NCBI GenBank assembly: GCA_000708835.1
Contig: DF236965.1
Coordinates: 248,001-312,000 of the forward strand
Direction: 5' to 3'
Source of the DNA: Klebsormidium nitens
Taxonomy: Eukaryota; Plantae; Klebsormidiophyceae
Length of the DNA: 64,000 nucleotides
In this document: piece by piece, positions 22,001 through 43,000 of the stretch
How the letters are laid out: the number at the start of each line of letters is the position of its first letter
How positions within the stretch are numbered: position 1 is the first letter of the stretch
The notes under the pieces: generated by a model
Seen by the model: the letters and a program-made list of their open reading frames with translations, nothing else
Told to the model about the DNA's origin: nothing
Databases searched by the model: none
Translations under genes and position numbers: made by a program

Positions 22001-25000
22001 GGCCCCGAACCCGAGCGGGGAGGGGGGGGAGGAGGAGGAGGGGCGGCGCCTGCGGGAGTGAACAGGAGAGGGTTGATTTGAAGGAGCGGCAGAACTAAGA
22101 GACGCATTTCCCAACGGGAATGGCCGAAGGCTAAAACGCGGCAAGTCAGCGAGACCCTGCGTTTAGGCCACAGCAAGTGACGTATTTGACAGCCAGCAAG
22201 GGAGAGCATTCCGCCGAACCAAAGCGGAAGTGCAGAAGACTGGCTTGTTCTGAGACAGCTTGAGAGTACAGGAGAATCGCACTCATACCTTTGTTCTCCT
22301 GCCAACTAACGTGATTCATTTCAAGTCGCCCTTGGTTTGCCGACATATTCGAATGGAATTCTGTCAAAATGGAAGTCATGGACGAAGCACAGCGACTGGG
22401 TTGGATACCCACCGTTGGGAGCCGCAGGGGGGGGTAGGGGCGGCGCCAGTGCCGGCGCGCTCGCTGCGGCCGGGGGGGCCGAGACAGGGTACGGCATCTG
22501 GGGATACTGGGGGGGGGGCATGACCATGGGAGGCTGTCCGGGTGCACCGGGCATGTACCCCGGGTACATCATCTGCCCGTTACCCACCCCGGGGGGGGGC
22601 ATTTGGTACACGATCTGGGGCGACGCGGCCCCCCCCTGAGGGGCCCCTTGCACGTAAATCACGTTCTCGCCCCCTTTCTGGGGGGATCCCCCGGGGGGGC
22701 CGTTCACGTACACGATCTGAACCGTCCGTTCGCCCGCGGGACCGTCGGAGCCGTCGGATAAAGCCCCCGAGGAGGAGCGGCTCATGCGGCGGAGCAGTTT
22801 TGGAGACGGCGCGTCACCCTCCTGGCGGAGGGCGACTGACGTCACCTTTGGGTTGCCCATGGGCTCGAAGAAGGAAGTGGCGAAGAGCGCGCCCGGATTA
22901 GTCTCCAGCTTCTGCTTGAACGCGCGCGCCTCGACATCCGGCTCGCGCTTCTTGTCGGGACCGCGCGAGAACTCGGCACGCCCGGCAATGAATGCCACCT
23001 GGGAGGGCAAGCTGACGTGTTAACAGCGTGACCCTACTGGGCCTTTCCTCTCTCGAGGTCGTTGCTTCTTCCTTCTCGGAAGCGACTCTTGCAAGGTCCA
23101 GCTTTGCTTCTGTAACAGCAAACTCTCGATATCAAACACAATGAATACAGAAGAGTAGTCGCTTGACTGGCTTTCCATGTCGTGCCAAAAACAGAAACTG
23201 AGCCCTAACTTAGTCGACTCAACCAGCCAAATGGCTTGGCCATTCTATATCAACCTTGAAGTAGGGTTCAGGAAGCGAGCCAGAGTTGCTCAGATCCGCA
23301 CTTTAAAATCCGCACAAAATCAGCGGGTCCCTAAAATCGTAACCCTGAAAATGCAGAAAACTTCCTCACCTGGAAGTCTACGAGCACGCTACCAGCCCGC
23401 TTGCGCAGTATGTTGACGCAGCGCGTGTCGACGCGCGCGGACGCGGCAACGCTCCTGCGGAACACGCCCTCCGCCTCGTCGCTGAACTCCGACAGCTTCG
23501 CGCGCGGGAACGCCACCGTGGCCTCGACGAACGCAGCGCCGGCTACAAGAAGGATGACGTCAGCGTCAGACTTTGTCACTGTCAGCGCAAGGACGATGAC
23601 GCCAGCTTTCGCCGGAAACAATGTCAGTGCGACGTCGAAATTTCAATGTTCAGCACAACCGTTGGTACAGACAGCCCACTTGAGGGACCCCCGAACTCAC
23701 GATCTACTGCCAAAAAACCCGCCAATGAGCCATCCGCCAATTATAGGGAAGCTTCTCTACGAGGGCGACATGTTTTCAGACCCGGTACGAATAAAACTAA
23801 GAGCCAGGGATTGTGGACCCACCCCGCTCGTCCTCGCCGTCCGAGGTGCCGTCCGCGGAATCGGACGTCCACCAGGTGGCCGGGAAGCGCACTTGCAGAA
23901 AGTGCTTGAGCGTCGTGGTGTAGTCGAACGTGTCGTTGATCGACGTCACCGGCAGCTTCCAGCACCCGAACGACTTGCAGTTCTGCGGCACCAGCCGCTC
24001 CAGCAGCGACGCGATCTGCGTACATGGAAAATTGCACCCAGTCAGGTAACCTGGATAAAAGGCAGATTGGATAGTTTTGCATCTTCGTGGGTGCGCTAAA
24101 TGCTCGGGCAACTGTTGCAATATTTTCAACACTTGTCTAAAACGCCCAAACCGTTTCGAGCATCTGTAGCAGCAAAAGCCGCAACCTAGGCGACAAGCGA
24201 GGCGATTGCTCGACGCATCTTTAGTAGCGTGACTATCAGTGCACAAATGTGATCGTGGGAGCTGTTTCATTATGATACAAAGCTGAGCGCTCTTGGCAAG
24301 TAACATCTTAGGTCCTCCGCTCGGATGCCTCCAAAGCCTGTATTTTTCTGAGAGAGATTTGTCCCACACGTTTTAAGAATGACTGCTTTCCGCTCCCGTT
24401 AAGAAGTGACTTCGTTGATTTTGAATCTATTCTCACGTCAGTGCTTTGCGAAGCGGTTCAAAACAGTACACGCACCTCGGGTCCCCTCTTCTTGTCGGCA
24501 CAAAGCAGCGCCAGCACTTCGGACGCCCGGGTCCGGATGATGGGCGCGATGTCCGCATCCACGATCATGTCCGAGAGGCGCGAAATGACGCCCAGGTTCA
24601 CAGCCAGCTCCACGGCCTTGGAGCTGCCGGAATAGACAGAGGAGCAGCTTGAAGTCATTGAATTTCAACCGACGGAAACACTTTAAATTCGTTGGAACAT
24701 GTCCAAATACGGGGTTGGCCCTGCTGAAATTACCAGTTTTGATAAAGTAGGACCGTCCCAAATCCCAAGTTGAAATGTTGACATTTTCCGGGGTTGGAAG
24801 CCTGCAGAAGGCGACCCAGTTGAACGCCACGAAATGGACACAGAACAATCAGATCGAGGTGCAAAATTATCCAGACGGCGAAAGCGTCTGTTCCCTAGAT
24901 TCACGCAGATTTGTCTACATCTTCACAGCATCCTCAGGAAGAGTCATCAAGCAGTGGAATCTCTACCTGATCCTCATCAGCCGCTGCAGCAGGATGAGGC

Positions 25001-28000
25001 AACACAGTCGCGGGTCGGTCCCCGCGTTCCCGGAGTTTAGGGACGACACGTTGAGCTGGAGGAACGAGCTGAGGGTGTAAATCAGCTCCTCCGTGGCCAT
25101 GAAGTCCGCCATCTCTGCAGAGAAACCAGAAAACGAAGATATTCACACCAGGCGCTGAAAAGGTGTGCTGCGTAGAGATGCAGGCCGTCGCACGGCTTTG
25201 CTTCAAGACGGCAGAAGTGCTCGGATTGGTCCCGGCATCGGCCAACTTCGACTCGTAGAGTGTGTTCTTTTCACATTATTCTTTCCGAAGGAGGATACTA
25301 ACACCTTAACGCAAACGTTGGACGCAAGATGACTGCAGAGGAAATGTGCGGTCTGCAAAGGATGGGATGGCCTGGGCCCGTACCTGGGTTGCTGGCTATA
25401 CAGTGGAAGAGCAGCATGGCTGCTTGGGACAGGCCTCGGTGATCTTCCCCGGTTCCTCCACTGCGATACAAACGATCGAAAGAGTTTGGTAAGGAACGCA
25501 ATCCACAAGCTACTGAATTCTTAATCTCCGCAGAAAGACACTGACTCCTGCGGCTTCGATGAAGTCAGTTTCGTGGCACTTTCGCCGCTTGACGAACCTC
25601 GAGTGCCGAAGACAGAGCTTGTCAAACTCTCGGTTGCACGCGCAAAAGAATCGCCATCCAGAATCAAGATACAAGAAAGATACTGAATTTCGCTTTGATT
25701 CTCTCACCTGATGAAGTCGTAAACAGCGAGGAAGATGTCGAGCGTGGACTGCGACGAGACCGATTGTGGCCGCTTGGTGAAAAAGAGAAGCAGGCCCAGC
25801 AGGAGCCGCCTGGAAACAAGGAGTGCAGGCTATTTGTCAGCGTACTACGGAATCTGAATAAACCTGCACACCTCAGTTTCAACTGCTTGACCTTCATGAC
25901 AACAAGTGGTAGGGGAACCTTCACATCGGCTTTTCTTTTGGTGCGACAGTCCAGAGTCGCACTGCGAGATTGCGCTGCGTTTGGCTTTCACACTGCGTCC
26001 GGCGTTCTCAACTCAGCTCTTGAGGTTGTCCAGATGCTGAAGCGTCCACTTAAAATGAAAAAGCCGTCCAGAACCAATGCAAATCAGTCCCCGAGCTTCG
26101 TCCTATGTCTCTGCACCGCCGTCCAAAACCGTCCGAACGCCGTTCGAGCCCGTCCAAACGACGTCCATATCACAGCAACAGGATCTGCCCGCCCTCTCAC
26201 CTTTTATCGTCGAATTCGAAGACCCCTTCGCCCGAGCCGTCCGTCGGGGCCGCAAGCGCCGTATACTTGCGCAGCTCCCGCACGAACTGCTCTTCCACCG
26301 CTTTCTCAACCCCGTGTTCTGGGTCACGTAACAACTGGTCCAGGTAGAACCCGCCCAGGTACATCTCCCGGACGTAGCCCGGCGCGCGGGCGTCCGCAAA
26401 AACGGGCTTTCGGACCTCGATCGTTTCGGGCTGCACGATGGCGAGGCACCAGCGCAGGAAGAGGGGACGCTCCCGAGCGAGAGACCTGTGATAAAATTGA
26501 GGGTTTTGGAATCAAAGCATTGCAGGGTAGGGGTATGTTCATTTACGTGACTTCACAATGTGACGAACTGGACATGCAGGAAGCATAGATTGCAAGAACA
26601 TGTAAGCGGCATTTAAGGAGCAAGAGGAGCAAGAGATGTGATTCAGGCCCTGATACTAGATTGGACGAGGATGAAGCTTCGTTCGGACAGTAGCAAATTC
26701 TTATCACTCTCCCTGTGTCTGGGGCAGGGACCCGAGCTTTGGAACTTCTATCGAAACCTCACCTTTTCACAGCCTCGTCTGGTAAAAAACGACACAAAAC
26801 ACCGATCCCCCCCCATCCTGTCAAGTACCGCAAACCCTGACCCAAACTTTAACCCAAAATAGATCCGGCCTCACCAGGTGGGCATCTTTCCGGCGCGCTC
26901 CTCCACAATCGTCTGCACCTTGTCCGCCTCGTCCTTGAGCACTGACGTCACCATCTCCCGCGTCTTCTTGTTCCACACTAGGGTCACCGCGCTCGCGTCC
27001 TCGTCAAACGCGCGGCACGCGGCCTCGGGATCTCGTGCGAGCAGCTTCAGGATCGCGGCGGGGAGCACGATTGCGAGCGTTTTCAGCAGGGCGGGGTCCT
27101 CCCGGCCCTCGTGATGCTCTGTGAACGCCAGAAGAAAGTGTCAGGGTTTTCGTTGTTTCAGGGCGAGGGGAAAAGCGGGGAGACTGACCGATATTGCTCG
27201 GAATATCGTTGGAACGAAGTCTGCAGCAGTGAGACGGGGTCGAGAGGGCGCTTGAAATCTGACATCGGCGTTTCTTGGATGTCTTCTAGAGTAATTCTCT
27301 AGTGGCCTTCGGAAAAGTCAAAGCGGAAAGATCGAATTCTGTCCGGTTGATCGCCAGGATTGTTTTTTCACCCGGCCTCAAAACGTTGCTAAGGTGCCAT
27401 GGGATCAAGTAGAGAAGCCGACAGAGCAGTAAGGACTTCATCAGCAGGTTCTTCGCAGCAGGACGATACGCCAGGTCTGCCGCACCGGAAGGCTGAGACC
27501 GACCCTTACTTGGTTCCAAGAGGGCCATCAAATCGTGCAGATCCAGCTCCTCTTCCGCGATTGACTCCTCCGCAGCCGCATCAATCCCGTTCGCGTACGA
27601 CCCTCGCCGCGAGCCCATCGACTCTCGCCTAGTCAGAGATTCCCTCCTCAGCGAGTCCCGCCGCCCGAACGATTCCCGTCGGCCAAACGACTCCCTCCGA
27701 TCGCCAAACGATTCCCGCTGACCCAAGGACTCCCTCCGATCGCCAAACGATCCTTGCCTCTCGCCAAACGACTCTCTCACAGGGCTGTCCGCGCGTGAGT
27801 CTTCGCCCTTCTTCGACATCGACATGAACGAGCCGTTCTGTTCCGTCAGCGCCTTTCCGCTGGACGACCGTCGCGAACTGTCGCCGGAATCTCTCTGCGA
27901 CCCGCTCGCGATGCTGTCGCGCCGGTTGTCCTTAGCGACAGCGTCCAATACGAGCGCGCCAAGTGTCGCCGCGGCGGCGAGCCGGACGTCCGACGGCTTT

Positions 28001-31000
28001 CCCGGTTTGTCTGAGCCGTTTGCGGACGGTGACGGGGTCTCAGGTTCGAGTGGGGGAAGAGCGACTTTGCAGAAGACGGACAGGTGGACCAATAACAGGG
28101 CGTTGCTGGTGAAAGTCGTGTTGGCCTCGTATCCGGGGGGGATGTTTTCGCTGCAACAGAACGAGGGCTGGCAGCTTGAGAGAAACGTCTCAGTAGCAAG
28201 TTCAGCTTCCGTTCCCACAGTGAACGCTTCCGACAAATGACGGACCGGAAACTCCAGCTTCAGAGGGACCGCAACCTTCTTTTGAATTTGTATGCAGAGT
28301 AATCAATGGAACTGCGATTGCTCTCTTAGAAAACCTTCTGTGATCTTGAGATCAGACACTGCGGACCAACAAAATCGGTGCCCGCCAAACTGCAGGTTGT
28401 TTTCGCAGTGGACTTTGCTCACTAGCGTTTCCAATCCAGACGCCACTCTGAACTTTTCTCCTTCAACAGCATCAACTCACCCATACTCTTCAGGAGATTC
28501 TTTCAGGAGATCCTTTTCAGGAGACTTTTGGTACCTTACCTGAGGGAAGTAAAGGCGTGGAGCAGTGCGAGCAATACCGCATCAGCCCCCGCGCTCGCGA
28601 CCGCCCAGAGCAGCTTGCACAGGACGGGGAACAGGGGTGACGACAGCAGGGCGTCACACGAGAGCGGATTTCGGGTTAGGGCCTCGCTGATGCCGGCTAA
28701 CTCAACCAAGACCGGTGGGTGACTGCTCCGGCTGAGGCTCGTCAGGAAAGGGTACCTGAGGATGGGTTAGGATTTGGGTTAGGACCCGAATGGGTTAGGC
28801 CAAGCTGCTGGTAGTGAGAGTGAAGACTGGACCGAAAACATATGCAAGGTCCGGATGCATCAAAAGAACATGGCTTTGACCTGGACACGAATGTGACCCT
28901 TTCTTTGGGTGATGATCCCCGTTTGCAAGTTTCACAGAAGCGCAGCTCAGCTGGCAGCAAGGCCTGTCGTCCTCTAGTGGGTCTCGGCCAAGAAAAAGCA
29001 ATGATAGGGTTTGGTCAAAATGATTTAGCATGACGGCATGCAAGAACAACATTATGTCTCCCCCAGTAAGAAGAGAGTATGACAACAGATACTAGTCCTG
29101 ACGGCATACTCTGCGTCGAAGTGCACGGCAAGCAAACCGAGCGGTTTGAGCTAGATTTGCACCTGATGGTTTGCAGCAGCTCCTCGTTCTCGTTGTTGAT
29201 TGCGTGCCAAACGCACTCCTTCAGCGCCTTCATCACGATCAGATAGTTGTCCAGGTCACTCTCGAGAGCTGCAAACGGACGGATAATGCCTTTTTACACC
29301 GAGCAACAAGGAGCTTCAATTAGTGCTTCCTCAGCAAGTCACCGGAGCCAAATGGCTCGTCGTGTCGACGGCGTTAGCTGCAGCAAACTGGTTTGCTCGT
29401 CGAACCCAAGAGATGCAAGACTGTAGAGCATAGCTGCAAAAAGTCAAATCACTCACGCGAGCTGAGAGATTCTTTTCCGCCTCTATTGACCATCCCGGGT
29501 GGATTCCCTCTAGCTACTCGCAGTCATCAACATCAAACGCGAATGCAAAAACGATACTTGAAATTCTACAGTAGCTGTAATCAAGCAATACTCGAAAACA
29601 AATCGACCAATATAAGAATACGGAAGTAATAAAGGAAATCAACGAACGATGGTAGGACTTCTCAGCCAGAACAACAGGTCTCAGCCTACAAGGGTCAGTA
29701 TCGTCCAAAAGTTTGGGGTTCTGATGCCAACCCAGAACCGCCAATATTCCAAGATTTCAAGAAATTGCTTCTGACCGAATGTTTCATCACTCACAGCTGC
29801 CGTTCGACTGTTTAACTTCCCCTGCGAGCACGGACTGGCTGCGCGCCTCGAGCCAGTCTTGGATGGCAACGCAGAAGCCGGCACCTTCTGGGAGATCGTA
29901 ATCCTCCCACCCCCCCGTCGCGTAGCCCTTAATGTACACCCCCCGAATCGTGATCTGGTTCTTAAGGCACTCGTACTTGAAGCTCGTCATCCAGTCGAGC
30001 TCGTCGACCTTCAATGGAACTGCAGGCGGGACGAGATAGGAGTCCAGAGTGAATGACTGACTTCAACAATGACCTCAAAATGAGAAGACGAGATGCTTCA
30101 AAAGTGGACTCGGTGGGACAGGGAATCTGAGCAGAACAGAGGCAGGCGACACGAAGCAGAATTCAGGAAGTAAGAACCACAATCACAAACAGTAGACGAG
30201 AAGATGAGAAGAGAAAGCAGCATGTTAAACAAGTGATTGGGGCCATTTAGGCTGCCCTCTAAAGATTGGGACCTGGAATGAATCCTTGAAGTCAAACGAG
30301 GCTCCAGAGAGCCCTGCAAAGACTTTCTTACCTCCTGTAAAGATGGCGGTGTTGTGGTCTTTCAACCGCTCCACGACCCGCCTTCTCAGCTCCGCCCGAA
30401 CCGGGGCCGTCCACATAGCCTGCGTGGAGCAAGCAGGAAACTTAGCGCTTTGTACGGGATGGCCTATCTGAGCCACGTCTCCAGGACGCTTCTGGGCAAA
30501 GTATCTGGGCCGCTCAGGAGAAAAGGAGCGCGGTAGCATTGCTTCCGACCGGGCAGTTTACGGCCGTATCACTGCTCAAAAGACCGGAGTCCTTTGAGGA
30601 CACAATCAGCAGATTGCAGAGGAGGTGCCGCCGAGAGTGACAACAGATTGCAGAGGGGAAATGCCGCAATCAGAGGACCTTTCAGCGTCTCAAAAGGTCG
30701 ACAGGGCAAAAACAGGCAGTTTACGTTCAAATCATGCGTCCAACAGGCATGTCAAATCCAGGCCGTTTGTTTGACTCCGAAACTCACCCCCGGCCGCTCG
30801 ATGTTTGTGACCGCCATGGCCGCAAACCGCTCGGGGCCATGCTCCGGGTCCTCCAGCGCCTGCAGCAGCGGCTCGGGGAGGATGTTCCCGAGCAGTCCCC
30901 GCGCGACCAGCTGCCGCGTGTTCGGCATCGGGCCCCCCGCGTTTTTGAGCGTGCGGTGAAGGGTGCGCAGAACGGCCGCCGCGGAGCTTAGGATGAGGGT

Positions 31001-34000
31001 TGACGCGGACGGGAGCACGGCGGCCGCGGTCTCGGGGGAGGTGGTGCCGGAGGGGACGGTGAGAAGGAGCAGGGGGAGGTACCACGCCTGGGGGGAGGTT
31101 TGGGTGTTGGTGTTTTGAGACATGAAAGTTTCCCCGTTTGTTACTGTCTGTCAAGTGTTCTACTCGCTTGCGTCCGTCTTTCAGAAAGTTAAATAAGTCC
31201 ATAGTTGCTTCAGTGAGAATGCCGTTGGCGAGGCGTGTGCCCGTGGTAGGGTTTAGATTCAGCTAGAAGGCTGCTCATATTGCACCTCGAAGATTCGAAG
31301 CCAAAATATCGTTCTACCCTATACAACGCGAACGCAGAGGAAAGAACGAACTCGGCACTGATCTTTCGAGGAAAAGTTGAGACTCAGTCGGTAGCAATAA
31401 GTACAGCACTTCAAGATGATGAAAGCCTTGACGAATTTGGCTCCTCCCCTTCTTCTCTCGCAAGAGTACCCAGCCTTGTCGTTGTGATCAACTGCAGGCT
31501 TTTGAGCATGTCAGCTAATTCCCCACTCCATTTTCCTTTAGCGAACGCTCACCTGCGACAGCGTAAACTCGCAGGAGGCCTCGTCCCCTGCGAAGTGGTT
31601 GAGACAGTCTAGCGCGATGGAGTGCACGGGGCTGCGCTCGACCTCCGCACCGTCGCCCACTGTGCAGCACAGGGCCCACCAGTACCCCTTGCGCCACCGC
31701 TGATCGTCGCCCAGTAACCGACGGCCCTCCCTGCGAAATCAAGGATTACTTAGGGGGTAAGGTGGGTGCAGATGCGGAGTGCGTAATCTCTGGTCCTTTT
31801 TAGTTGGGTAGAGGGGCTTATCGTCACTGGGCTCGAGGATTTGAAAGCGTACCCGCATTTTGACCAGTCGAACCGGTTCGGAGTTGTCTCTGTGCCCCTT
31901 TGGAGCCGCTTCGGACATCGTTGCATTCTTAAGTGCCGTTAGCCCTGGCTGCCAGGCTCAGCACAGGCAAGAGCAACATGCTTGTAGACTAAACTGACCT
32001 CAACGCCCAGTCAAGTCACAGCCTGCTGCTTTCAATCGAGCGATCAAACCGACGCCAAAGCAGTTTCGAATTCAGTCTGCGTTTGTTTCACCCCGTCATG
32101 AATCGGTAACCTTCTTCCAAATAGATAACACCAATCTTTCAAGACTAGCAGGTTACCAAATTTACCGGAGTAAAAAGTGTCAAATACCTGGAAGAAGCTG
32201 CCAGCTCCGCGATGCCGAACGCGCTCGCTAGCGCAGTTTCGAACATGATGTTGCCCGTCGGACGTGGCAGTTCGTCGTCCGTGACAGTCCGCGGTCCGAT
32301 TGCCAGCACCGTAATGGCGAAGTTGAGAGCAGCCGAGGAGACCTCCATTAGGTCCCTGCCAAGAATTGGACGAAGGGTGGCGTTCAGATTCCGGGAATTC
32401 TCAGATGTGAGAATCGCTTAGCTCGAGATCTGTTACCATCTACGAGCCATTGCATGACAAGAAAAGGGACAGCCTGATCTTTTCATGTTTCTCAAACGCA
32501 ACAGGCTCCCCTCGGAAACCACTACTCCTTGCTAAAAAGTCCGCATATGTTTCGAAAGGGACATGCAAACCACCTCGCAAGCAGTCCAGAAATTTACAGA
32601 AGCAATTTCGCCGGTTCATCTCCTTAGATGTCTTTCCTTCCCTAGTGGACAAACTGCCCAGTTCTCTCGTTGGTCCAGACACAGTCAACGCTTGGTTAGC
32701 AAACCCCGCACCTGTCATTGGTAGCAGAAACCCTGCGCAAGATCCAGAGCGCCCGGTGGAGAACCTCCAGCACCGAGGCTGGCGCGTCCGCTTTCTCCAC
32801 GTTGCAGATGCGCACGGCAGGCTTGGCTGCGCCAATCACGATCGCTTCCGTGTCGTGGGGGAGGATCACTTGGGGGTACCGCTGCAGTACGTGCTCCTGT
32901 AGGGGGACGAAAACGTAGAGATAAGTGCAAATGGTGCGACAAGTTTGACGAAGAATGACGGAGGATCCGATGAAGGTTGGGAAAACAGAAGGTATGCAGC
33001 TACGAAGGAAAGAGAATGAGTCTTTCACGCAGGAACAGAAGCAACCTCGTAGCCAAGGGAGTAAAACGAGGCGAGTGAGAGTTCTCTGCTGCGTCAGATT
33101 TGGCTAACAAAAGGAGGAAGAGTGACAGTCAGCACAAAAAAAACCGCCTTCGAGGTTACCCTCTGCTGAGGTGTCAGTCACAATTGCTCACAGGAAACGT
33201 TTCCCTTTTCTCGGACAGATACGAACACCAGTAATGTCGAGTAGCCTCTGGACTCATGAGTGTCTTTGGGTCACTCGACTTGGCAGCCATGCCACGTGGC
33301 ACTCACCAGGGCCTTGAGCAGCAGCAGCACGCGCGGCACCTGGTCGCGCCACGTGGGGCCCTCCTGGCCGTCCGTATTCTTGGGCACCAGCCGCAGCTCC
33401 TCCATGATGCTGTTCGCAAACGGCGTCGCATCCAGGATCTCATAAGTCGCCCCCTTGGCGAAGTCCAGCAGGTTATGAAGATATAAGGGGGCGCAGTACA
33501 CCTTGTTCTCGAGCTCGTGGTGCTCGAGCGGCGCACGCCCGCGCGTGCTCCGGAAGGGAAGCAACGGGTTTTCGGCCCGCTGGCCCGCATACGGGGTTAG
33601 GATCTCGGTTAAGTGCGCGGTTAGCCGCTCTTTCATGCTGGGTTGCCAGACGACTTCCGGGGTATCGAGCGTCTGATGCAGCGCTGCCGCAAACGGCTCG
33701 GGGCCTTCTTTTATCAGCAACCCAATCAAGCCCGACGGTAGGTAGAGTCGCAGGATCGAGTCTTGCCACGGTAACGTGCTCAACGACGTCTTCCGATCGG
33801 ACCCCGTAACGTGTTTCAAAGCGTCGGGGCTCTGCGCGAGGTGCGTCAGCGCGAGGAACCGCGCGATCGACTGGCGGTCGTAATCGGTGACGTCACCCGC
33901 AAGCGTCTTCCAGAGCAGAATCTCGAACACGCCCGACCGGTGGAGCTGGGTTAGAGCACGCCGGTCAGCGGTAACCACAAGGGTTAGGACGTCCAAGATG

Positions 34001-37000
34001 CGTCCGAACACTGGGGTCTTGGCGCGAAGGAGGAGGGAGACGAGAAGAGACGCACAGGGTTCTTGGGAAAGGGATACGATAGCGGCAGGGGGAGGGAACT
34101 GATCAGCACGGTTGCCGGACAGCCTGCAGCAACAGAAAGAAGACTCATGAGCGTCAGAACAAGAAACCTAGCTGAAAAAGCAAAGCCATAAATTGCAGAA
34201 GACAAACATGGCTTAAAGTCTTCATCTAGAACTATTCACCTCAGATAAGCTCACAAAGATTGCACAAACCCTCGCGCCTCCTGATTTGGCGATTCCTCAT
34301 AGCACACGTGTGACCCAGAGCGAGAATAAGCGTCTGTTCTGGAGCAATTGCTTTGGAGAATCGCTAGCTGACGTCACCTGATCATGGCCTCGGCCAGGTC
34401 GAGGCACGTGCCGAGGCAGACCGACTCCGGGACGGTGTCGTCCCGCCAGGACACGTCCTTGGGGTCGCGTCCGCCGTCGGATGAGCCTTTTGTCGGCGTG
34501 CTGCCACGTGGCACGATGCGGCCGTCCTCCGTGAGGTCGGCGCCGTCGCTCACAGGCGGTGCATCAAGCTTCGAGCGGCCGGTGTAGGCGTCGCACTCCA
34601 GGAGCGTCTTGTCGGTGCACATCTGAGGAATCGTAAAATCTCGGTATTCAAGGTTCAGGCTTCGCAGATCGAGTCTGGAAATGTGACGAACGGTGGCCGC
34701 TAAAATAATTCTCAGGTGGTGGAGAGATACATCCGAGCATTCCCTAACGGAAACCAGAGCTTCAGTAAACCAAGACTTGGGTCAGGACGAGCCAACGACT
34801 GAAAAGCCGTGAATCACCAGCGTTCTTCCGTGTTGGACTCTGCAACCCCGTTTGAAACATATCTGGCCGAGACTTCAACATGCGCCCCAGGTGAAGCTTC
34901 TCAGCCTTCCACTCCCAAAACCAGACCGACCCCAAAACCTGCACCAGGTTCAACCAGCTCAAGCAGCGATACCGGCCATCCCTAAAAGACGAGGCGAATC
35001 GCTCCTCACGTTGTGGAGGCAGTGCGCCATCATGGGCGCGAGCACAGAGGGGCCCCCCGCGCGCACGACCTGGAGCACATTCTCGCGCCCGCCCAGCTCC
35101 ATGGCCGTAAGCAGGAAGAGCAGCAGCTGGTACTTGAGCGACTGCTGGTCGTGCGTGGCCGCCACTTGCAGCATCAGCACCACGATCTGAAAGAAAAAAA
35201 AGGATTGAAATGGTTGCTGGGGAGGAAAGATTTGTGTTGAAAACGCATCCCAGATCTGCTGAAAAGTCCCCTTTGCAGCCGCTTGGAAACGTCACGTGCA
35301 TGGGCGTTGCAGCGGCATGTAGGAAAGTTTGCGCTTCCATGTGTTAAAAAGCACTTTGCAAGCAAGAACGCACAAAGCTCTCGGCCAGCGCTCGAATGTG
35401 GACCGAGCGCAGACCAGCGTGCAAAACGAATAATCGCTGAAGTTGTAAAGCCAGGAGCCGGCAGTCAGTCCAAAGCCTTGCCAACGCTAGAATCTTTCCT
35501 GTGCAGATTAATCACCCTCCGACCACCCTGGCAGAGCCTCGAAATCCTGGGAGTGACTTCTACAATCCTATGAACTAAAGACCGGACATGAAACAGCTTG
35601 CAGGGTTATCCAATCCGTCTTCCAGTAACGAGGTAGACCAGCGCTCGCTATCTGTGCTCACCTCAATCACGTTAAGGCCCTGGACCGCATGCCCCAGGTC
35701 CTTATGGTGCCGTTTGAACACCCATGCCAGCGCATGCATCCCCAACCGCAGGTCGATCTCCGTGACGCTGCGAGTGGGCCCCTGGAGCGGCGCCAGGGGG
35801 GTGAAGCCCAGGATGATGGTTTGGAACAGCGACGAGAAGAAGGTGACCGCGTCGCGCAGCTGCAAAGGGGAGCCTTTGTCAGCACATGGTTTCGAAGGGT
35901 CGTAAAACCAGCTGTCCTTGAGCAACTCTCGTAGAGATCGCCTGGCAGTCTCCAAATGGGTTGCTCTGAAAGTTCGACGACAGCTCCGCACAACAAGATT
36001 CCCGTTTCCGTGCGTTGTATTATTCTGCACGTTCGCATCAACAGCGTTCTCACGGAGTCATGGTCTGGCCCTTGGAAATCACCCTTCACCTTGGGGGCAG
36101 ATAAGAAGGCGTGCATGAGATCGGAACCTGAACTCAACCGTCGACAGAAGAGATTGGAAGCCGCACGTACCTACCAAAATTTTTCCATCGGCCCATGTTA
36201 GAGTGCTTGGCCGGAATCGCTCGGCGCACACGATTGAACCAAGTGCTTTCAGATTCAACCCAGCAACGAATGAAAGCGATCACAAGCGCACCTTCCAGGG
36301 ATCCCCCAGCAGGCCCGCGTTGGGGTGCTCCGGCAGATCGACGAGCAGCTCCAGGTGGATGCCCTCGATGATGGTGCCATGGTTCTCCGACGCGTCGCTG
36401 TACGGCAGATACACCTCCCCAATGTTGTAAATCACACTCTGGTCGTTGCCCGCTGCAGCGTCGAACGCCTCAACCTGGCCCGCCAGAAACTGCAAGGAGC
36501 GCTCGGAGTTTCAAGTCGCTATAGAATCTGGTTCGTTTCTTCCATTCCCTTGATAGATCTGGGGTATAAAGAGGTGTTATCAAGGTCGTTGAAAGCGCTT
36601 TCATTGCAGGGCTCTGCGCATGCATCCACTTGGCTCGCCTAAGACAGCTCATATGGTGCAGCATTTCTTATTTCAGGGCTTTAAAGCAAAGGGTTGAGGT
36701 TTTTCGAAGCGGCGACCAAAGGATGTACGCTTAAAATGTTCCTCTGAAAAGATGGTCCACAGCAGCTTAACCCACCACTTAGAGAACGCTTTCGCTTGGC
36801 AACCACTATCCTTAGTCTTGAGATTCCAACTTGCAAACGCTGCATGATAGCAACGTGCTTACAACATGCTTGTGACGGTCAAAATAATTGTGACCGCTCA
36901 CCAGTTGCAGCTCCTTCCGTTTCAGGTCGTTCCACACGAGCGTCGGCAGCGCGACTTCCTCCTTCCTCAGCACCTCCAGGATCTCCAGCCACGCCGTCAG

Positions 37001-40000
37001 CTGCACCGTGCGCATGTCCTGCATGGTGCGCTGGAGGGGCGTTAGGGGTTTAGAATACAGGGGAGCAAAAGGGAGAGTCAAGGAAAGGAGGAGTTTGGGA
37101 CCTCGAAAGCCAGATCCAGGTCAGATGTTCGTGTCGAGAAACGGTGGAAGTTAGAAGACAGCCTTGAAGTGCGAACAGCATGAATGACCCTTCTACTTAG
37201 GACGGTTAATATACTGAATATAGAAGTAGAAGCGAGAAGGCCGTTTAAACTGGATCAACAATGTTACGGTTGGTGCTGACGACATCGTCTGATAGGGCGA
37301 TGTGACTTTGGGGTTAAGCTAGTGGCAAGGTCATTCGCTCGGGTAGCTCAGGTAGATACGTTGACCACGAAAGGCTGCCCTCATAACGTGGATATAGATG
37401 ACGATGCAAAAACCGCTTCAGAGCCAAGGAAATGCACACGCAACAGACCCTCGCGTTTGCACAAGGCTTGACGGCGTAGAAACTTACAAAGTAGGTTCGA
37501 CTACAAAACGGTAGGTTTTCTGAAAACCAAAGCCGAATTTAGACGAGTAAGTCAGGCCCGAGCGCGCATAAGGCCAAACTTTGATCCATGAGAACCTTGG
37601 CGGCGTAAAACCCACTGGAATCAAGCTGGCTCAAGTACGAAAAAGGTTGGGGTAAACCGGAACTAGAGTGGAGAGTTACAGATGTAAGCACGCACCAGGC
37701 CCGACTTGGCATTGGCGAGGACTTTTGCAGCCATGAAAATCTGAAACTGAGTCGATTAAGTAGGCCTAAGAACGAAAACTTACGGAAAGGTCTGGTAGAT
37801 AAAACTCAAACCTAAACCTAGTCAAGGGTTACGAATAACCGAGCACGCACCAGGCCCGACTTTGCATTGGCGAGGACCTTGGCGGCGTGGCAGTAGAAGA
37901 CGCCCTTGGGCAGGACGGCCTCGATCATCTTGCGCGTGTCGGTGCTGCCCTCCATGAGCAGGAACACCAGGTTGCCGCTCAGCAGGCGCATCATCTCGTT
38001 CTTGTGGAACAGCGCGACCTTCAGGTGCAGCAGCACCACGCACCGTGCGAGGGCCACTTTCTGTAAGAGAAGTGGGAGAGTGTGAGACGATTTCGGATGC
38101 GAAAGCGTCTCGAGTTTCTTGTGAACGAGCGTTTCTTTTGCTCTTCTGGAGAGAAAGCGTGAGAACGAAGCAGAGATTGGATGAAGACCAGGTTGCCCCT
38201 CAGGAGCGCATCATCTCGTTCTTGTGGAACAGCGCGACCTTCAAGTGAAAGAGCACCACGCACCGCGCAAGGGCGACTTTCTGTGAAGAAATAGGGAGGG
38301 TGTGAGGCTTTCGGATACGGAAACATTGCGAGGCTTTTTGGGCGTTGCAAGAGCGTCCTTCTTGTTGTTTGAGGAGGGGAAAGAGAAAGAGGTAGAGATT
38401 GGACACCAGACTTGCCCTCAACAAGCGTAACGTCCCGTTCTTGTGGAACAGCGCAACATTCGAGCGGAGGAACACAACGCACCGCACAAAAGCAGTCTGG
38501 AGAAGAGGCGAAGGGTTACTGACTGGATATCGGCAGACGTTAACGGGCTCCCTCTCTTTGCGAGTTGAAGGCGAAGGAACAAGTCTCGAAGGGACAATGG
38601 ACGGGATCGGAGACGGCAGAAAAGAAGTAAAATAAAGGGTTGCTTAAGTGTTGCGAGACTTGAGTAGAAGATACAACCATCAAGGGGAAACCGACTGACT
38701 TTCACGGGACCAAGGAGCAGAGGGCCTCCGATTCCGCAAACAAGATGTGCTTAGGAGTCCGCTTCTGACCCGCATCAAAAAGCCGGTACTTGACTACGTC
38801 AGTCTGACTTGCAGTGATAAACGAAACAAAGTTGCTGGCTTGGAAAGGCCACAATTAAGTAATTCAGTAGCTCCCACGATAAACGGCGGTGCTTACCTGG
38901 ATGTGGCTGGTAACGGGCGGCGAGGCCTTGATGAGCAGGCTGCGCATGAGGACCGTGTTGCACCGGAACACCACCGTGCTGCGCGTGCGGCAAATGGCCG
39001 ACAGCACGTCCGCGGCGCCCATCAGCGCGCTCTCCAGCGACTGCGGACAGGATCCGGACAAGTTACGGACCAGCTCGGACACGCTTCGGACGAGTCTCCG
39101 TTTCCGGGCAGAATCGCATTCACTTATCCATTAGTTTCTGACACACTATAACAAGAGAATCCGGCTTGTCAATTATTCTTGTAGAGTCGGGGATTGTTTG
39201 ACACCAAGAGCGAGGGAGCGCATCGTTACGAAACACCGTGCCCGTAGAGAAGAGTCACGCAATGGGAGCTAAAAACGCAGGGCTTCAAGCTCCGTGAAAG
39301 TGCTGCCATAGCACTTCACACTACAGGGAGTTGAATTGTGGGATTGTGGCCGACCGAGGAAAGGGAAGGGCAAGAGCTTTTCGGTTTGCTCTGAAGACGA
39401 GTAGTTTTCGGTTTTGATTATGGCACGCACCCTGAACCAGGCGACCTCCTTCTCGTTGTCCTGCGCCGTGTGCGACGTGAGTGCGAGCACCAGGATCTCC
39501 AGGTAGGCCATGACCTGCAGGGCGTTCTGGCCCAGAAATGCGTGCGTGTGCAGCATCGCCACCAGCTGCTGCAGGCTCTCGGGGGTCAGCACGGACAGCT
39601 TGTTCAGGTTCTCCTGCAAACAAAGGGGCGAGGTTTTAGGTTTGCTATTTGGTCGAGTTCGGCAGTCTAGACTTTGCTGAAAACTTTAGGGTAAATGTAT
39701 CTAAAGGGCCACATGGAACGCCTTTAGACCACATGGAACGCCAAAATGAACATGATGGGTAGATATCCCTTCTTGGGGGTCAGCATCGACAGCTTGTTCG
39801 AGTTCTCCTGCAAATGGAGGGGCGGGGTTTCAGGATTGAATGGTTATCAATTTTAGGACTTTAGGGTTTGAAATCTAGGGGAGGTGAATTTCCATAAAGA
39901 GGGAACGCAAAACGGATAATGAAGGGCAAGAGGCTCTCGAAGGTCAGCACCGGCAGCTCGTTCAGGTTTCCCGGAAACAGGAGGAGACAGATCTAAAGGT

Positions 40001-43000
40001 AGTTCAGAGTGCAAGATGTGGGAAAGAACGATTAAGAGTTGAGATTGGTTCTTTCAGATCTCGTGCAGCAAATCAGATGAATGTCAGAATTTACACGGGG
40101 CAACGAGAGAACTCTGAATCTCAAGGTCCGGAACGGTACCGCACGGTATCGTCTCCAGAATTTACAACGAGGACTGCTTGCTTAAGGCGCACTGTTGAGC
40201 ATCAGATCGCCAGTGTTGAGTCGAGTTGCCTTCAGAAATGTCACACGAGCGCGTCATGAGCCGGCTCTCGTTTGAGCTGAGTTGAAAGTCACCTTCGAGC
40301 TTCAACGGACCTCCACGCACCAACGAGAGGAAACATTGCCATGACGCAGCACATAACCAGGGCGATCCACGTTTCAACGAGCAAGGAGTCCTTGTATGAC
40401 AGCTGAAGTATACGACAGCTGAAGGCGCACCATAGGCCGACCGACTAGCACGATAAGCGCTCACCTTCGCTTGCCACGCGCTGTCCATAGGCCCCGGGTT
40501 TGGCGACGCATACTTCGCCGCGGCGCGGATCGCTTGCGAGGCGACGTAGGTGATCATGGGGTTCTCACTGCGGATGCATTTGAAGAGAACGGCGCTGAGG
40601 CCGGGCACGTCTTTGACGCCCTCGAAGCACTTGCGGGAGGAGAGCAGGCGCTGGATCATGACGCAGCAGGGGACGATGTAGAGAGCCGCGATGTCGGTCT
40701 TGGCTGCAAAGATTGACAGAATCGAAGTTCAGAGAATGAGAACGGGAAGCTCGGAACAATGGAGCAAGAAGGAAACCTCATCTCGAGAAAAGTTGAGAGG
40801 TTACGTTTGCTTCCAGATGACGTTCTGTCAGATCCTGTGGGGCAGAATAGCTGCTCAATGCACAGGGCTACGCTGTCGGACTTGTCTGCGATCGAGCGCG
40901 AGTTTATGACGTCATGTGACGTCCAGGCTGAACATTCTGGGCGACCACCACAGCCTGGGCACCAAGACCATCTCCATGAGGGCGCTCCACCACGGCGGCG
41001 TCCCCGCGTACAACGTGCACAACCTGTACGGCTCTGCGGAAGGCCGCGCTACACACCTCGCCCTCCGGGGCGCCCATCGTCCCTTCGCTTAGAAGAAACG
41101 GTGAATCTTCATTTCTGATGCACCTTGTGATCTTGCATTCAAAACAAGAAAAGCGAACTTTCTCCACGCCGAAAATCCAAGACAACCACAACGACCGTGC
41201 AAAGAAATCATGAACGGCCACGAAAATCACAGCTGACGTGACGTCATACGGTCACTCACAAATGACGTCCTTGAGGAAGTCGCAGACAATGCCGAGCATC
41301 TTTGGGTCCATGCACTGCACCTCCCCTGCGGGCACGTTGCAGATGTACTGCTTCACCACCGGCTGCCACGCGGCAGGGTTGCGCCCCGCAGTGTGAATGG
41401 CCACCAGCTGACTCAGCAAAGACGCCTCGTACTCGTACTGCAAGGAAGGGAACACTTGTTAGTTTTGCCAAGACATGTAGCGGTGTGATTGGCCACCAGC
41501 TGGCTGAGCAGGGACGCCTCGTACTCGAATTGTGAGGAAAATAGCAGATTTCAATGTTGAGTGTAACGAGTACCAATGTGAATGGGCACCGGCTGGCTTA
41601 GCAGGGACGCCTCGTACTGTGAAGAAAATACAATCAGTAGTGTTAGAGTGACCTGTAGCGGTGTGAACGGGCACCAGCTGGCTTAGCAGGAACGCCTCGT
41701 ACTCGTACTGTGAGGAAGAATTAAGTGGCGTTAAACGGACATGCAGCGGAGTACCAACTTGCCAAGCAAGGATGCCTCGCACTGTGAGACCAAAAGCGAC
41801 TGGTTACGTCTAATGACGTAGCGGTGTGAATGGGCACCAGCTGGCTCAGTGGAAGGACCGCGAATCTCAGTAAGGGGGCCACTCTGGCAGGCATAAGAAA
41901 CCCCGGAATAGTGGAATGAGCACAAGCTGACTGAGAAACGGACGCCCCAACCATACTGCAAGAAAAGTTGGAAGAAACTCGTTTCGCCTTCTCCATCAAG
42001 CAAAAACGTGTTGGGTTTTATGTAAAGACCTTCGAGCCAGCTCGAGACTGCTGAAGCGGCTGATAAGATAGATTCTTCCTCCTCACGTGTTTCCGAACCT
42101 TAGAAGCGAACCTTCGCACCCAAAGAGTTGATTCAAACCAAAGAGTTGACACTCAAGCCATCGCCGATCCTTGCAGTCTGACTATATGTGAAGTGCAATG
42201 CAAACCTGCACTTACCAGCGACATAAGCAGGGGCCGGTCCGGCAGGCAGTGCCCGAAGAGGGGCTCCATTCGGAAGCTGAAGTGCGAGCCCTTGATAATG
42301 CTGATGCTCTCCGCCACGCTCGCCAGAAACGCATCTCGCTGCTCGAGATAGTAGTGCGTCGGGCGCCAGTTCTTGTACTCAATCACGATCTCGCGCTCGT
42401 TGGCGGGGACCATCACGACGCCCAAAATGTCGACCAGGCTGCGTTTGGGGGGTAGATAGAGGGAAAATAAGCAGAGGACAACAGACTGCCTCGAGATGGA
42501 ATGCTTCAGATGAAAATGCGTTTACTACTGGAAGGGCGCCACAATCACGCTCATCACGGCTTTTGAAGAGCGAGAAAAGCTGCTTGAATTTTATGAGAGC
42601 GTATCTCATCAATCTGCACTGATCATTGCCTTTAACAAAAGGGTGGCATTTCGCCTTTTTTTGTTTGTGCGCACCAAGCCTATCCCCTTTCTCTACCTTG
42701 CCTTTTCCTTCGAAAACGAATAAAAGATCACGGGTTGCGAAACAAACGAGGGACTCCAGGGTGGGCAAGAACGTAGCGGGGAGGGGTGAGGCGCAGGAGA
42801 ACAGAAAATGGTTGTTGTGCATCGCCCGACAGTGCCCGGCAGGGTACAAGAAACATTCGTCGCCATGTAAGACTCTAGAACCAGGAAGCGAGTAAGCGAC
42901 CTAGCTTGCACATCCGTGATCCGCAGAAGATTAGTCCAGAGAGTCCTCCTCCGAGCTGCGAAAGCCATCTCGTTGTGAAGCGAAAAGAACAGAGGGGCCG

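What the first reader, a model, noticed from the sequence alone, without database searches (positions are those of the whole stretch)
33307..33480. RME-8/DNAJC13-like protein with the J domain cleanly absent
Established: RME-8/DNAJC13/GRV2 has a central DnaJ domain (HPD motif) between the LENELFC..YL block and the IILILK..IL block. Seen: here both blocks (LENKVYCAPLYLHNL and VLLLLKAL|EHVL) are joined within one exon by about 35 residues (..IMEELRLVPKNTDGQEGPTWRDQVPR) with no HPD, so the domain cannot be hidden in an intron. Inference: an Hsc70-independent RME-8 paralogue that may act as a scaffold or a competitor of a canonical copy.
Basis: partly seen in the sequence, partly recalled or inferred. 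Interest (0 to 1): 0.7.

Follow-up and report, generated by a model that had tools for sequence, protein, structure and literature searches.

The report
RME-8-like trafficking scaffold without J domain
This streptophyte alga carries an intact, selected gene for a giant RME-8/DNAJC13-like endosomal scaffold that lacks the chaperone-recruiting J domain. It belongs to an apparently undescribed J-less family found from streptophyte algae to mosses, ferns and a conifer.

Summary
One minus-strand exon (34123-33307) holds both flanks of the site where canonical RME-8/DNAJC13/GRV2 carries its J domain. An 8-residue loop between two helices takes the domain's place. No J domain is encoded in any frame of the 64-kb window.

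This is neither an artefact nor decay. The gene has about 35 exons and runs from 48145 to about 19025. It keeps RME-8_N matches and all four IWN motifs. The big exon has dN/dS 0.07 against a close relative.

It belongs to a J-less family seen in Chara, Coleochaete, Closterium, Spirogloea, liverworts, mosses, Selaginella, ferns and Cryptomeria. Closterium NIES-65 has both a J-less and a J-bearing copy, so the family is a paralogue.

- The PI(3)P-binding Trp (human W20) is lost throughout the family.
- The gene probably continues past its apparent stop into a conserved C-terminal module with FH1-like polyproline tracts.

An origin inside the green canonical clade is rejected (AU p 4e-8), but long-branch effects cannot be excluded. 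I found no paper describing the family.

The scan had no earlier RME-8 note for this genome.

The parts
19025..48145 (-). Whole gene as I read it: start ATG at 48145, about 35 exons, stop at 19027-19025. The RME-8-like body ends near 23823 and a C-terminal extension follows.
   Evidence: The window is collinear by tblastn with the Chara, Spirogloea, Ceratopteris, Closterium, Marchantia, Physcomitrium and Cryptomeria members. In-frame stops lie just upstream of the ATG. The terminal ORF is 19025-19243.
47837..48145 (-). Exon 1, the first PH-like fold (PHL1). It begins MDYQLFFVRPPGR. The canonical KHSWRGKYKR PI(3)P motif is not kept: the Trp and Tyr are gone.
   Evidence: The Trp is absent in 10 of 10 J-less members and present in 11 of the 14 canonical sequences compared; the other three have a gap at that column.
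37872..38093 (-). Exon matching Pfam RME-8_N (PF19432), profile positions 592-654, at 27.8 bits against a cut-off of 25.4. Exons 42228-42440 and 39434-39613 give weaker, collinear matches.
36908..36946 (-). IWN1 motif (LPTLVWNDLKRKELQ).
33307..34123 (-). Single 817-nt exon holding the end of ARM2, IWN2 (PEVVWQPSMKERL, from 33660) and both flanks of the missing J domain.
   Evidence: The 825-nt conserved block is continuous. dN/dS is 0.07. The AF2 model has pLDDT 83 and pTM 0.81.
33352..33375 (-). Loop of 8 residues (GQEGPT region) between helix 223-240 and helix 249-262 of the exon model. This is the place where canonical RME-8 has its J domain.
   Evidence: The linker between the two flanking helices is about 8-17 residues in the 15 streptophyte rows of alignment A5.
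32709..32896 (-). Next exon (EHVLQRYPQVILP...), homologous to the canonical post-J ILFRRYP region.
30327..30423 (-). Exon with IWN3 (AMWTAPVRAELRRRV).
26870..27121 (-). Exon with IWN4 (VTLVWNKKTREMV).
23797..24018 (-). Last exon of the RME-8-like body. If it is read through, an in-frame TAG lies at 23799-23797. A donor G|GTGGGT at 23823/23822 lies 24 nt before that stop.
19025..23542 (-). C-terminal extension, in four parts: (1) an alpha/beta domain (23542-23370 and 23010 onward); (2) a Q/P-rich stretch; (3) five or six PPPPPPPPGG-type tracts (about 22049-21730); (4) a conserved roughly 170-aa helical domain with a basic tail KGKIQRKKK (21248-19025). The acceptor AG|CC at 23543/23542 joins in frame with the donor at 23823.
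   Evidence: The extension is shared with Marchantia, Calypogeia, Physcomitrium, Sphagnum, Selaginella and one 9.5-kb transcript-like contig (P0188).

Best explanation
SHOWN. The window holds a complete, intron-rich gene (48145 to about 19025, minus strand). It is a member of a conserved J-domain-less RME-8-like family of streptophytes.

What the protein keeps of RME-8/DNAJC13/GRV2:
- the N-terminal triple PH-like region (RME-8_N);
- all four IWN motifs;
- the ARM-type solenoid, collinear over about 1,970 shared alignment columns.

What it lacks:
- the J domain, which in canonical proteins sits inside ARM3 and is replaced here by a short loop between two solenoid helices;
- the Trp/Tyr of the PI(3)P pocket in PHL1.

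The gene is under strong purifying selection.

INFERRED. Without a J domain it cannot recruit or activate Hsc70. It is therefore a scaffold, not a co-chaperone. It also escapes two J-dependent controls described for canonical RME-8: autoinhibition by J binding to IWN3/IWN4, and Hsc70-dependent release from membranes.

Its IWN/ARM body probably still binds partners. Its membrane or target recruitment must differ from PI(3)P-PHL1 binding.

In this alga, bryophytes and Selaginella the body is probably joined to a C-terminal module with FH1-like polyproline tracts and a conserved helical domain ending in a basic tail. I read the protein as an adaptor that links a trafficking compartment or complex to proline-binding factors (profilin, SH3, WW or EVH1 type). 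It would do this constitutively rather than through an Hsp70 cycle. This last step is speculation.
For: Identity:
- Exon E-values are 3e-50 to 5e-40 against J-less members and about 1e-17 against canonical RME-8.
- Window exons match RME-8_N. Orthologues have RME-8_N only; canonical proteins have RME-8_N plus DnaJ, with or without GYF_2.

J absence:
- Shown: - The model of the exon has pLDDT 83. It shows an IWN2 hairpin plus long helix, and an 8-residue loop at the J site. This fits the published description of IWN folds and of J lying 'within ARM3' (PMC13618431).

Gene integrity and selection:
- Only exons align to the relative's contig.
- dN/dS is 0.07 at dS 0.9.

Family breadth:
- Members occur in Chara, Coleochaete (a transcript), Closterium, Spirogloea, Marchantia, Calypogeia, Sphagnum, Physcomitrium, Ceratodon, Selaginella, Ceratopteris, Adiantum and Cryptomeria.
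- Many members sit on 7-9.5 kb contigs that are almost wholly coding, which means spliced mRNAs.
- The window falls inside this clade at 100/100 support.

Paralogy:
- Closterium NIES-65 has both forms.

Other features:
- W20/Y24 loss.
- IWN1-4 kept.
- Extension.

Functional precedent:
- HPD-to-AAA DNAJC13 binds PI(3)P about 5-fold better, is 3.6-fold more endosomal and acts as a dominant negative (PMC12404652).
- In C. elegans the J domain binds the IWN3/IWN4 region and competes with SNX-1 (PMC9642905).
Against: - The exon joins, including 23823 to 23542, rest on splice signals, reading frame and collinearity with relatives.
- The polyproline exon changes reading frame near 21941. The extension as assembled therefore needs either a 1-nt correction or an odd 49-nt intron.
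- Ferns, the conifer, Chara and Spirogloea end their proteins before the extension. The extension is therefore not needed for the family's core role.
- No partner, localisation or phenotype is known for any member.
- Part of the basic PHL2/PHL3 pocket is kept, but two of the basic positions conserved in canonical proteins (nematode numbering R289, R345) are lost.
- The GYF-like region gives no Pfam hit.
Confidence: 0.75

Rival explanations
1. The J-less form is an ancient paralogue that predates streptophytes. It would be shared with the J-less RME-8-like proteins of oomycetes (Globisporangium/Pythium) and some unidentified eukaryotes, and possibly date to early eukaryote evolution.
For: - In FastTree and in IQ-TREE (LG+C20 PMSF) all 12 J-less rows lie on one side of a branch with 99-100 support, against 26 J-bearing rows from Archaeplastida, a diatom, Amoebidium, Diphylleia and Rhodelphis.
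- The AU test rejects streptophyte J-less plus green canonical as one clade (p 4.4e-8).
- With the other J-less rows removed, the clade still attaches deep rather than at the green canonical group.
- The oomycete form lacks the J domain at the same place and also lacks the PHL1 Trp.
Against: - All J-less lineages have long branches (stems 0.9-2.7), so long-branch attraction is a live risk and the AU test shares that bias.
- Of 12 columns that separate streptophyte J-less from canonical proteins, the oomycete and metagenomic J-less proteins share only 1-2 of the derived states.
- The distribution is patchy, which would need many losses.
Confidence: 0.3
2. The duplication happened in the streptophyte stem (or a green-lineage stem). 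The J domain was then lost and evolution accelerated. The deep placement in the trees is an artefact.
For: - Confirmed members are all streptophytes, and their internal tree follows the species tree.
- The stem branch is very long.
- Few derived states are shared with oomycete J-less proteins.
Against: The AU test rejects the required topology. No chlorophyte member was seen, but none was looked for exhaustively.
Confidence: 0.45
3. This is the alga's only RME-8. A canonical orthologue lost its J domain, and there is no J-bearing partner in the genome.
For: No canonical copy was seen. I could examine only this window, and the scan's notes hold no RME-8/GRV2 entry for this genome.
Against: - Closterium NIES-65 has both forms.
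- The window's gene sits inside the J-less clade, not with the canonical green proteins.
- Canonical GRV2 is general in plants; this last point is from my own knowledge and was not tested here.
Confidence: 0.1
4. Artefact or pseudogene: the J domain is missing through mis-assembly, lies on an unrecognised exon, or the gene is decaying.
For: A frame change lies in the polyproline tract near 21941. No RNA data are available.
Against: - The same junction is present in a second species at 92% protein identity and in 14 other genera, several of them from transcripts.
- dN/dS is 0.07.
- No J signal occurs in any frame of the 64 kb.
- No stops occur in any homologous exon block.
Confidence: 0.02

Closest known systems
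RME-8 / DNAJC13 / GRV2 (KAM2, SGR8), the endosomal J-domain co-chaperone
   Same: The overall architecture and order of parts are the same: a triple PH-like N-terminus (Pfam RME-8_N), ARM-type solenoids and four IWN motifs, the family's signature. About 1,970 alignment columns are shared. The exon around IWN2 is the best conserved part, keeping 28 of 58 canonical-invariant positions.
   Different: - No J domain.
- The PHL1 Trp/Tyr needed for PI(3)P binding are lost.
- A variable loop (Acer 798-905) and 16 columns after the GYF-like region are absent.
- There is no GYF_2 Pfam hit.
- Only about 40% of canonical-invariant positions are kept.
- A C-terminal polyproline-bearing extension has no counterpart in canonical proteins.
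Uncharacterised database entries auto-named 'DnaJ homologue subfamily C GRV2/DNAJC13 N-terminal domain-containing protein'. Examples are Chara braunii GBG63346, Ceratopteris KAH7284661, Marchantia 'DnaJ homolog subfamily C member 13', and the Physcomitrium, Selaginella and Cryptomeria LOC131047061 entries.
   Same: It is the same family. The proteins are collinear end to end, share the same J-less loop and the same PHL1 changes, and the window falls inside their clade at 100/100 support.
   Different: The window's protein is about 40-45% identical to them in the J-site exon and sits on its own long branch. It shares the long C-terminal extension with bryophytes and Selaginella, but not with ferns, the conifer, Chara or Spirogloea.
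Experimental HPD-to-AAA and C-terminal mutants of DNAJC13 / C. elegans RME-8
   Same: These proteins lack J function while the scaffold stays intact. They show what removing J activity does: more membrane binding, loss of autoinhibition and dominant-negative effects on recycling (PMC12404652, PMC9642905).
   Different: Those mutants keep the J fold and the PI(3)P pocket. The natural family has deleted the fold and altered the pocket, so simple competition at PI(3)P endosomes is less likely.
RME-8 homologues with a degenerate J domain (P0082, P0148), and 'J-like' proteins in general
   Same: The HPD motif is lost in an otherwise RME-8-type protein. Norris et al. flagged homologues with mutated J residues or without W20 in a figure, without further comment (PMC9642905).
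   Different: Those proteins keep a recognisable J-like fold, sit inside the canonical clade, and share 0 of 12 signature states of the J-less family.

Membership tests
RME-8/DNAJC13/GRV2 (canonical) | N-terminal RME-8_N region (three PH-like folds, PF19432) | tested here: met
   Window exon 37872-38093 scores 27.8 bits against a cut-off of 25.4. Two further exons hit collinear profile positions. Orthologues score E 1e-15 to 1e-33.
RME-8/DNAJC13/GRV2 (canonical) | Four IWN repeats | tested here: met
   IWN1 lies at 36946-36908, IWN2 starts at 33660, IWN3 starts at 30419 and IWN4 lies near 26981. The Trp of each motif is kept in 7-8 of 8 family members.
RME-8/DNAJC13/GRV2 (canonical) | Central J domain with HPD, inserted in ARM3 | tested here: not met
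   Pfam finds no DnaJ in the exon. The J HMM finds nothing in six frames (best E 0.81). The alignments show a clean gap.
RME-8/DNAJC13/GRV2 (canonical) | PI(3)P pocket residues of PHL1 (human K17, W20, Y24, R26) | tested here: not met
   The Trp is absent in 10 of 10 J-less members and the Tyr is not kept. An Arg stands at the Lys position, and an Arg is kept near R26.
RME-8/DNAJC13/GRV2 (canonical) | GYF-like domain in ARM2 | tested here: inconclusive
   The orthologues give no PF14237 hit. The region does align, with only 16 columns missing after it.
RME-8/DNAJC13/GRV2 (canonical) | Binds and activates Hsc70; binds SNX1 and, in animals, FAM21 | not testable with these tools
   This needs biochemistry.
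J-less RME-8-like family of streptophytes (unnamed) | Short loop in place of the J domain, between the F..S.M..LR helix and the WR..PR..LLL helix | tested here: met
   Shown by alignment A5 and the model.
J-less RME-8-like family of streptophytes (unnamed) | End-to-end collinearity with members and placement inside their clade | tested here: met
   tblastn chains and the exon tree at 100/100 support.
J-less RME-8-like family of streptophytes (unnamed) | C-terminal extension (alpha/beta domain, polyproline tracts, conserved helical domain with basic tail), as in bryophytes and Selaginella | tested here: met
   The window matches Marchantia residues 2275-2938 at 40-81% identity downstream of 23797. 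The splice 23823 to 23542 is in frame. The frame change at about 21941 is unresolved.

The most novel reading that the evidence does not exclude
Eukaryotes have two old kinds of RME-8. One is the known Hsc70-recruiting form. The other is a J-less, PI(3)P-pocket-less scaffold that survives in streptophytes (algae to conifers), oomycetes and a few other lineages. In early streptophytes the J-less form is fused to a polyproline module, so that it could couple endosomal sorting directly to actin or SH3-type machinery in organisms said to lack the WASH complex (that absence is from my own knowledge, not tested here).
Probability: 0.25. Interest if true: 0.8.

Novelty: new variant of a known kind. 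Interest (0 to 1): 0.6.

Why it matters
RME-8/DNAJC13 is defined and studied as a J-domain protein. All current models of its action rest on Hsc70 recruitment: uncoating of ESCRT-0, clathrin and SNX1, autoinhibition through J-IWN contacts, and Hsc70-controlled residence on endosomes.

A family that has kept the whole 2,200-residue scaffold under selection for hundreds of millions of years while discarding the J domain and the PI(3)P Trp shows that the scaffold has a chaperone-independent job.

The family is present in Marchantia and Physcomitrium, where knock-outs and tagging are routine, so the question can be tested directly. No flowering-plant member turned up among the hits I saw. That would explain why Arabidopsis work never met the family.

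Tried and rejected
- Pfam on the exon and on seven large minus-strand ORFs gave nothing. The middle of RME-8 has no Pfam model other than DnaJ.
- PDB sequence searches with the exon, with profile A2 and with the extension gave no real hit. DNAJC13's cryo-EM structure is not in the copy searched.
- Foldseek against the PDB with the exon model returned only weak armadillo-repeat rows (best E 0.08).
- The first word search with Chara's protein was swamped by its candidate cap and returned 4 proteins. An alignment query worked better.
- The ESM Atlas feature searches were uninformative.
- A metagenome scan for canonical green RME-8 found 353 relatives, but none could be tied to this alga or its close relative. 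It says nothing about a canonical copy here.
- P0167, a J-bearing JGI protein, turned out to come from an intron-poor unrelated organism.
- The C-terminal domain was folded (pLDDT 70; core residues 27-105 at about 90). It found no convincing fold match. ATP-cone-like rows at TM 0.27-0.35 are only a lead.
- I considered and rejected a flagellum-linked distribution, because Zygnematophyceae and a conifer have the gene.
All window searches were exon by exon, by reference.
Full report
OBSERVATION. On the minus strand an uninterrupted exon runs from 34123 to 33307. The acceptor AG is at 34125/34124 and the donor GT follows 33307. The exon ends ...RVLLLLKAL, and the next exon starts at 32896 with EHVLQRYPQ behind a cag acceptor.

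The 235-aa exon finds 161 proteins at E up to 1e-3 among 1.84 billion representatives. A close set scores 3e-50 to 5e-40 and aligns through the whole exon. Canonical RME-8 proteins score about 1e-17 and below, and their match stops just before the junction. Alignments A1 and A2 show canonical proteins with a J domain (YHPDKNP) of 55-85 residues between the YPEL..C..YL.NL block and the LLLLKAQ..RYP block. The window has a clean gap there.

Three results argue against a J domain hidden elsewhere:
- A J-domain HMM built from the canonical hits recognises every canonical protein at 1e-16 to 1e-28, but finds nothing in the six-frame translation of the window (best E 0.81).
- Pfam finds no DnaJ in the exon.
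- Nothing conserved lies in the flanking introns.

THE GENE. tblastn of seven family members against the window gives one collinear chain of about 30 exon blocks from 48145 down to 23797. The ATG at 48145 is preceded by in-frame stops, and the product starts MDY... like all relatives.

A JGI metagenome contig from a close relative (L001, 92% protein identity in the big exon) aligns to the window only in exon-sized blocks at 79-92% nucleotide identity. The introns do not align. The block 34126-33302 is continuous, and no block lies between 33302 and 32899. For the big exon, dN is 0.064 and dS 0.90, giving dN/dS 0.07. Protein identity is 242 of 263 residues.

Three N-terminal exons hit Pfam RME-8_N at collinear profile positions, one above the curated cut-off. 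All four IWN motifs are present: IWN1 at 36946-36908, IWN2 starting at 33660, IWN3 starting at 30419 and IWN4 near 26981.

Every search on the window was done exon by exon, by reference.

THE FAMILY. The close hits are J-less throughout:
- Streptophyte algae: Closterium spp., Coleochaete scutata (a Trinity transcript), Spirogloea muscicola and Chara braunii.
- Bryophytes: Marchantia, Calypogeia, Sphagnum, Physcomitrium and Ceratodon.
- Vascular plants: Selaginella, Ceratopteris (two loci), Adiantum and Cryptomeria japonica.

All carry PF19432 only, and none matches my J HMM. About a dozen members lie on Logan contigs of 7.1-9.5 kb that are almost wholly coding. These are spliced mRNAs, so in relatives the J-less product is transcribed as such.

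The linker between the two flanking helices is about 8-17 residues in the 15 streptophyte rows of alignment A5. A tree of the exon region puts the window inside this clade at 100/100 support, on its own long branch. That fits an early-branching streptophyte alga. Other agents of this scan name the genome Klebsormidium nitens; I did not test that name.

Closterium sp. NIES-65 encodes both a J-less member (P0155, CAI5962743) and a canonical J-bearing RME-8 (P0047, CAI5970939) that groups with Acer GRV2. The family is therefore a paralogue, not a replacement.

No flowering-plant member was among the hits. Absence was not tested exhaustively.

WHAT IS KEPT AND WHAT IS LOST. In a joint alignment of 8 J-less and 12 canonical proteins, 1,974 columns are shared. 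The canonical-only blocks are a variable loop (Acer 798-905), 16 columns after the GYF-like region, and the J core. About 40% of canonical-invariant positions are kept. The best-kept region is around IWN2, at 28 of 58 positions.

The AF2 model of the exon (17-row alignment, pLDDT 83, pTM 0.81) shows three things:
- solenoid helices;
- a beta-hairpin followed by a 24-residue helix at IWN2;
- helix 223-240, an 8-residue loop and helix 249-262 at the J site.

This agrees with the cryo-EM description of IWN repeats and of the J domain as an element 'within ARM3' (PMC13618431). Removing J therefore leaves the solenoid intact.

In PHL1 the canonical KHSW.G.YKR motif is replaced by VR.PGR-type sequence. 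That motif holds human K17, W20, Y24 and R26, and single substitutions at K17, W20 or Y24 abolish PI(3)P binding and endosomal localisation (PMC12404652, PMC13618431). The Trp is absent in 10 of 10 J-less members. Several basic residues of PHL2/PHL3 are kept (nematode numbering R181, K245, R256, R314) and two are lost (R289, R345). Mapping these to the published InsP6 pocket is only approximate.

C-TERMINAL EXTENSION (not in the finding). The Marchantia, Calypogeia, Physcomitrium, Sphagnum and Selaginella proteins, and a 2,942-aa ORF on a 9.5-kb transcript-like contig, run 250-700 residues beyond the point where the fern, conifer, Chara and Spirogloea proteins end.

Marchantia residues 2275-2938 match the window downstream of the apparent stop, at 40-81% identity in six blocks from 23528 to 19040. 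A donor G|GTGGGT at 23823/23822, 24 nt before the TAG at 23799-23797, joins in frame to an acceptor at 23543/23542. The join is collinear with Marchantia.

The extension holds four parts:
- an alpha/beta domain;
- a Q/P-rich stretch;
- five or six PPPPPPPPGG-type tracts, like FH1 or WASP-family proline regions;
- a roughly 170-aa conserved domain ending in KGKIQRKKK, with the stop at 19027-19025.

It has no Pfam, NCBIfam or PDB match. Its fold model (core pLDDT about 90) finds nothing convincing.

One problem remains. Within the proline exon the open frame changes by one base near 21941. Either one base is wrong in a G/C run, or a 49-nt GT..AG piece is removed.

ORIGIN. FastTree on 63 proteins places all J-less proteins on one side of a branch with 100 support, away from every J-bearing RME-8. 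IQ-TREE (LG+C20 PMSF) on 38 proteins does the same, with support of 99. The J-less side comprises the streptophyte members, the oomycete Globisporangium/Pythium P0052/K3X1E4, and metagenomic P0086, P0090 and P0111. The J-bearing side includes Acer, Closterium, a diatom, Amoebidium, Diphylleia and Rhodelphis (names).

The AU test rejects streptophyte J-less plus the green canonical group as one clade (lnL difference 62, p 4.4e-8). With the other J-less rows removed, the clade still attaches deep. This favours a duplication older than streptophytes.

Two cautions apply. All J-less stems are long. And of 12 columns that separate streptophyte J-less from canonical proteins, the non-plant J-less proteins share only 1-2 derived states. 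I therefore leave the depth of the duplication open.

Two proteins inside the canonical clade (P0082, P0148) keep a J-like fold without HPD. J function has thus been lost more than once.

HOW IT MOST LIKELY WORKS. The protein cannot activate Hsc70. Published work shows that the J domain docks on the IWN3/IWN4 region and competes with SNX-1 (PMC9642905). It also shows that HPD mutants bind PI(3)P about 5-fold better, sit on endosomes 3.6-fold more and act as dominant negatives (PMC12404652).

A natural J-less form should therefore be a constitutively 'open' scaffold that no Hsc70 cycle removes. Because its PI(3)P Trp is gone, I expect recruitment by another route, and so a role distinct from simple competition with GRV2.

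The polyproline module in this alga, bryophytes and Selaginella suggests coupling to profilin-actin or to SH3/WW/EVH1 proteins. Canonical RME-8 reaches actin through the WASH complex. That plants lack WASH is my own recollection and was not tested here. These functional steps are inference.

NOVELTY. The proteins sit in databases under automatic names. Six of my seven full-text searches looked for a description of a J-less RME-8 paralogue and found none. The broadest survey, by Norris et al. 2022, filed homologues by BLAST coverage and IWN motifs. It only flagged, in a figure, homologues with mutated J residues or no W20.

LIMITS.
- I could not look for a canonical copy in the rest of the genome. 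The scan's notes hold none, and a metagenome scan was uninformative.

Noticed in passing
window 19025-23542 (-): About 650 codons downstream of the apparent stop of the RME-8-like body match the C-terminal extension of the bryophyte and Selaginella members: an alpha/beta domain, polyproline tracts, and a conserved helical domain with a basic tail. They can be spliced in frame (23823 to 23542). The module has no Pfam or PDB relative.
   Followed up: partly
window 21890-21945 (-): Inside the polyproline exon the open frame shifts by one base. One frame carries three PPPPPPPP units and then runs into a stop at 21808. The other frame carries the next three units up to the donor at about 21730. Either a 1-nt error in a G/C run or a 49-nt GT..AG piece would reconcile them.
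   Followed up: no
window 38134-38283 (-): A second, weaker copy of the exon at 38063-37875 lies about 120 nt upstream in the intron (80% to the relative's exon over 102 nt; 38-43% to Marchantia and Physcomitrium residues 592-640). It may be a duplicated or alternative exon, or a relic.
   Followed up: no
proteins P0052/P0170 (Globisporangium/Pythium), P0090, P0086, P0111: RME-8-like proteins outside plants that also lack the J domain at the same site. The oomycete one also lacks the PHL1 Trp. It is open whether they share the plant family's origin.
   Followed up: partly
proteins P0082, P0148: RME-8 homologues inside the canonical clade keep a J-like segment but have lost HPD (FHQAT / LQQEN in its place). 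Their organisms are unknown.
   Followed up: partly
proteins P0159, P0181-P0185, P0196, P0197 (ferns): Fern proteins, several on contigs that are almost wholly coding (spliced transcripts), stop about 15 residues into the first domain of the extension (...VEASLTFPGAKLS). Ferns seem to have truncated the module rather than never having had it.
   Followed up: no
window 1440-2192 (-) and 57056-57712 (-): Other genes are in the window: an ORF with an FYRN domain (E 6e-12) and one with a TPR repeat (E 8e-8).
   Followed up: no
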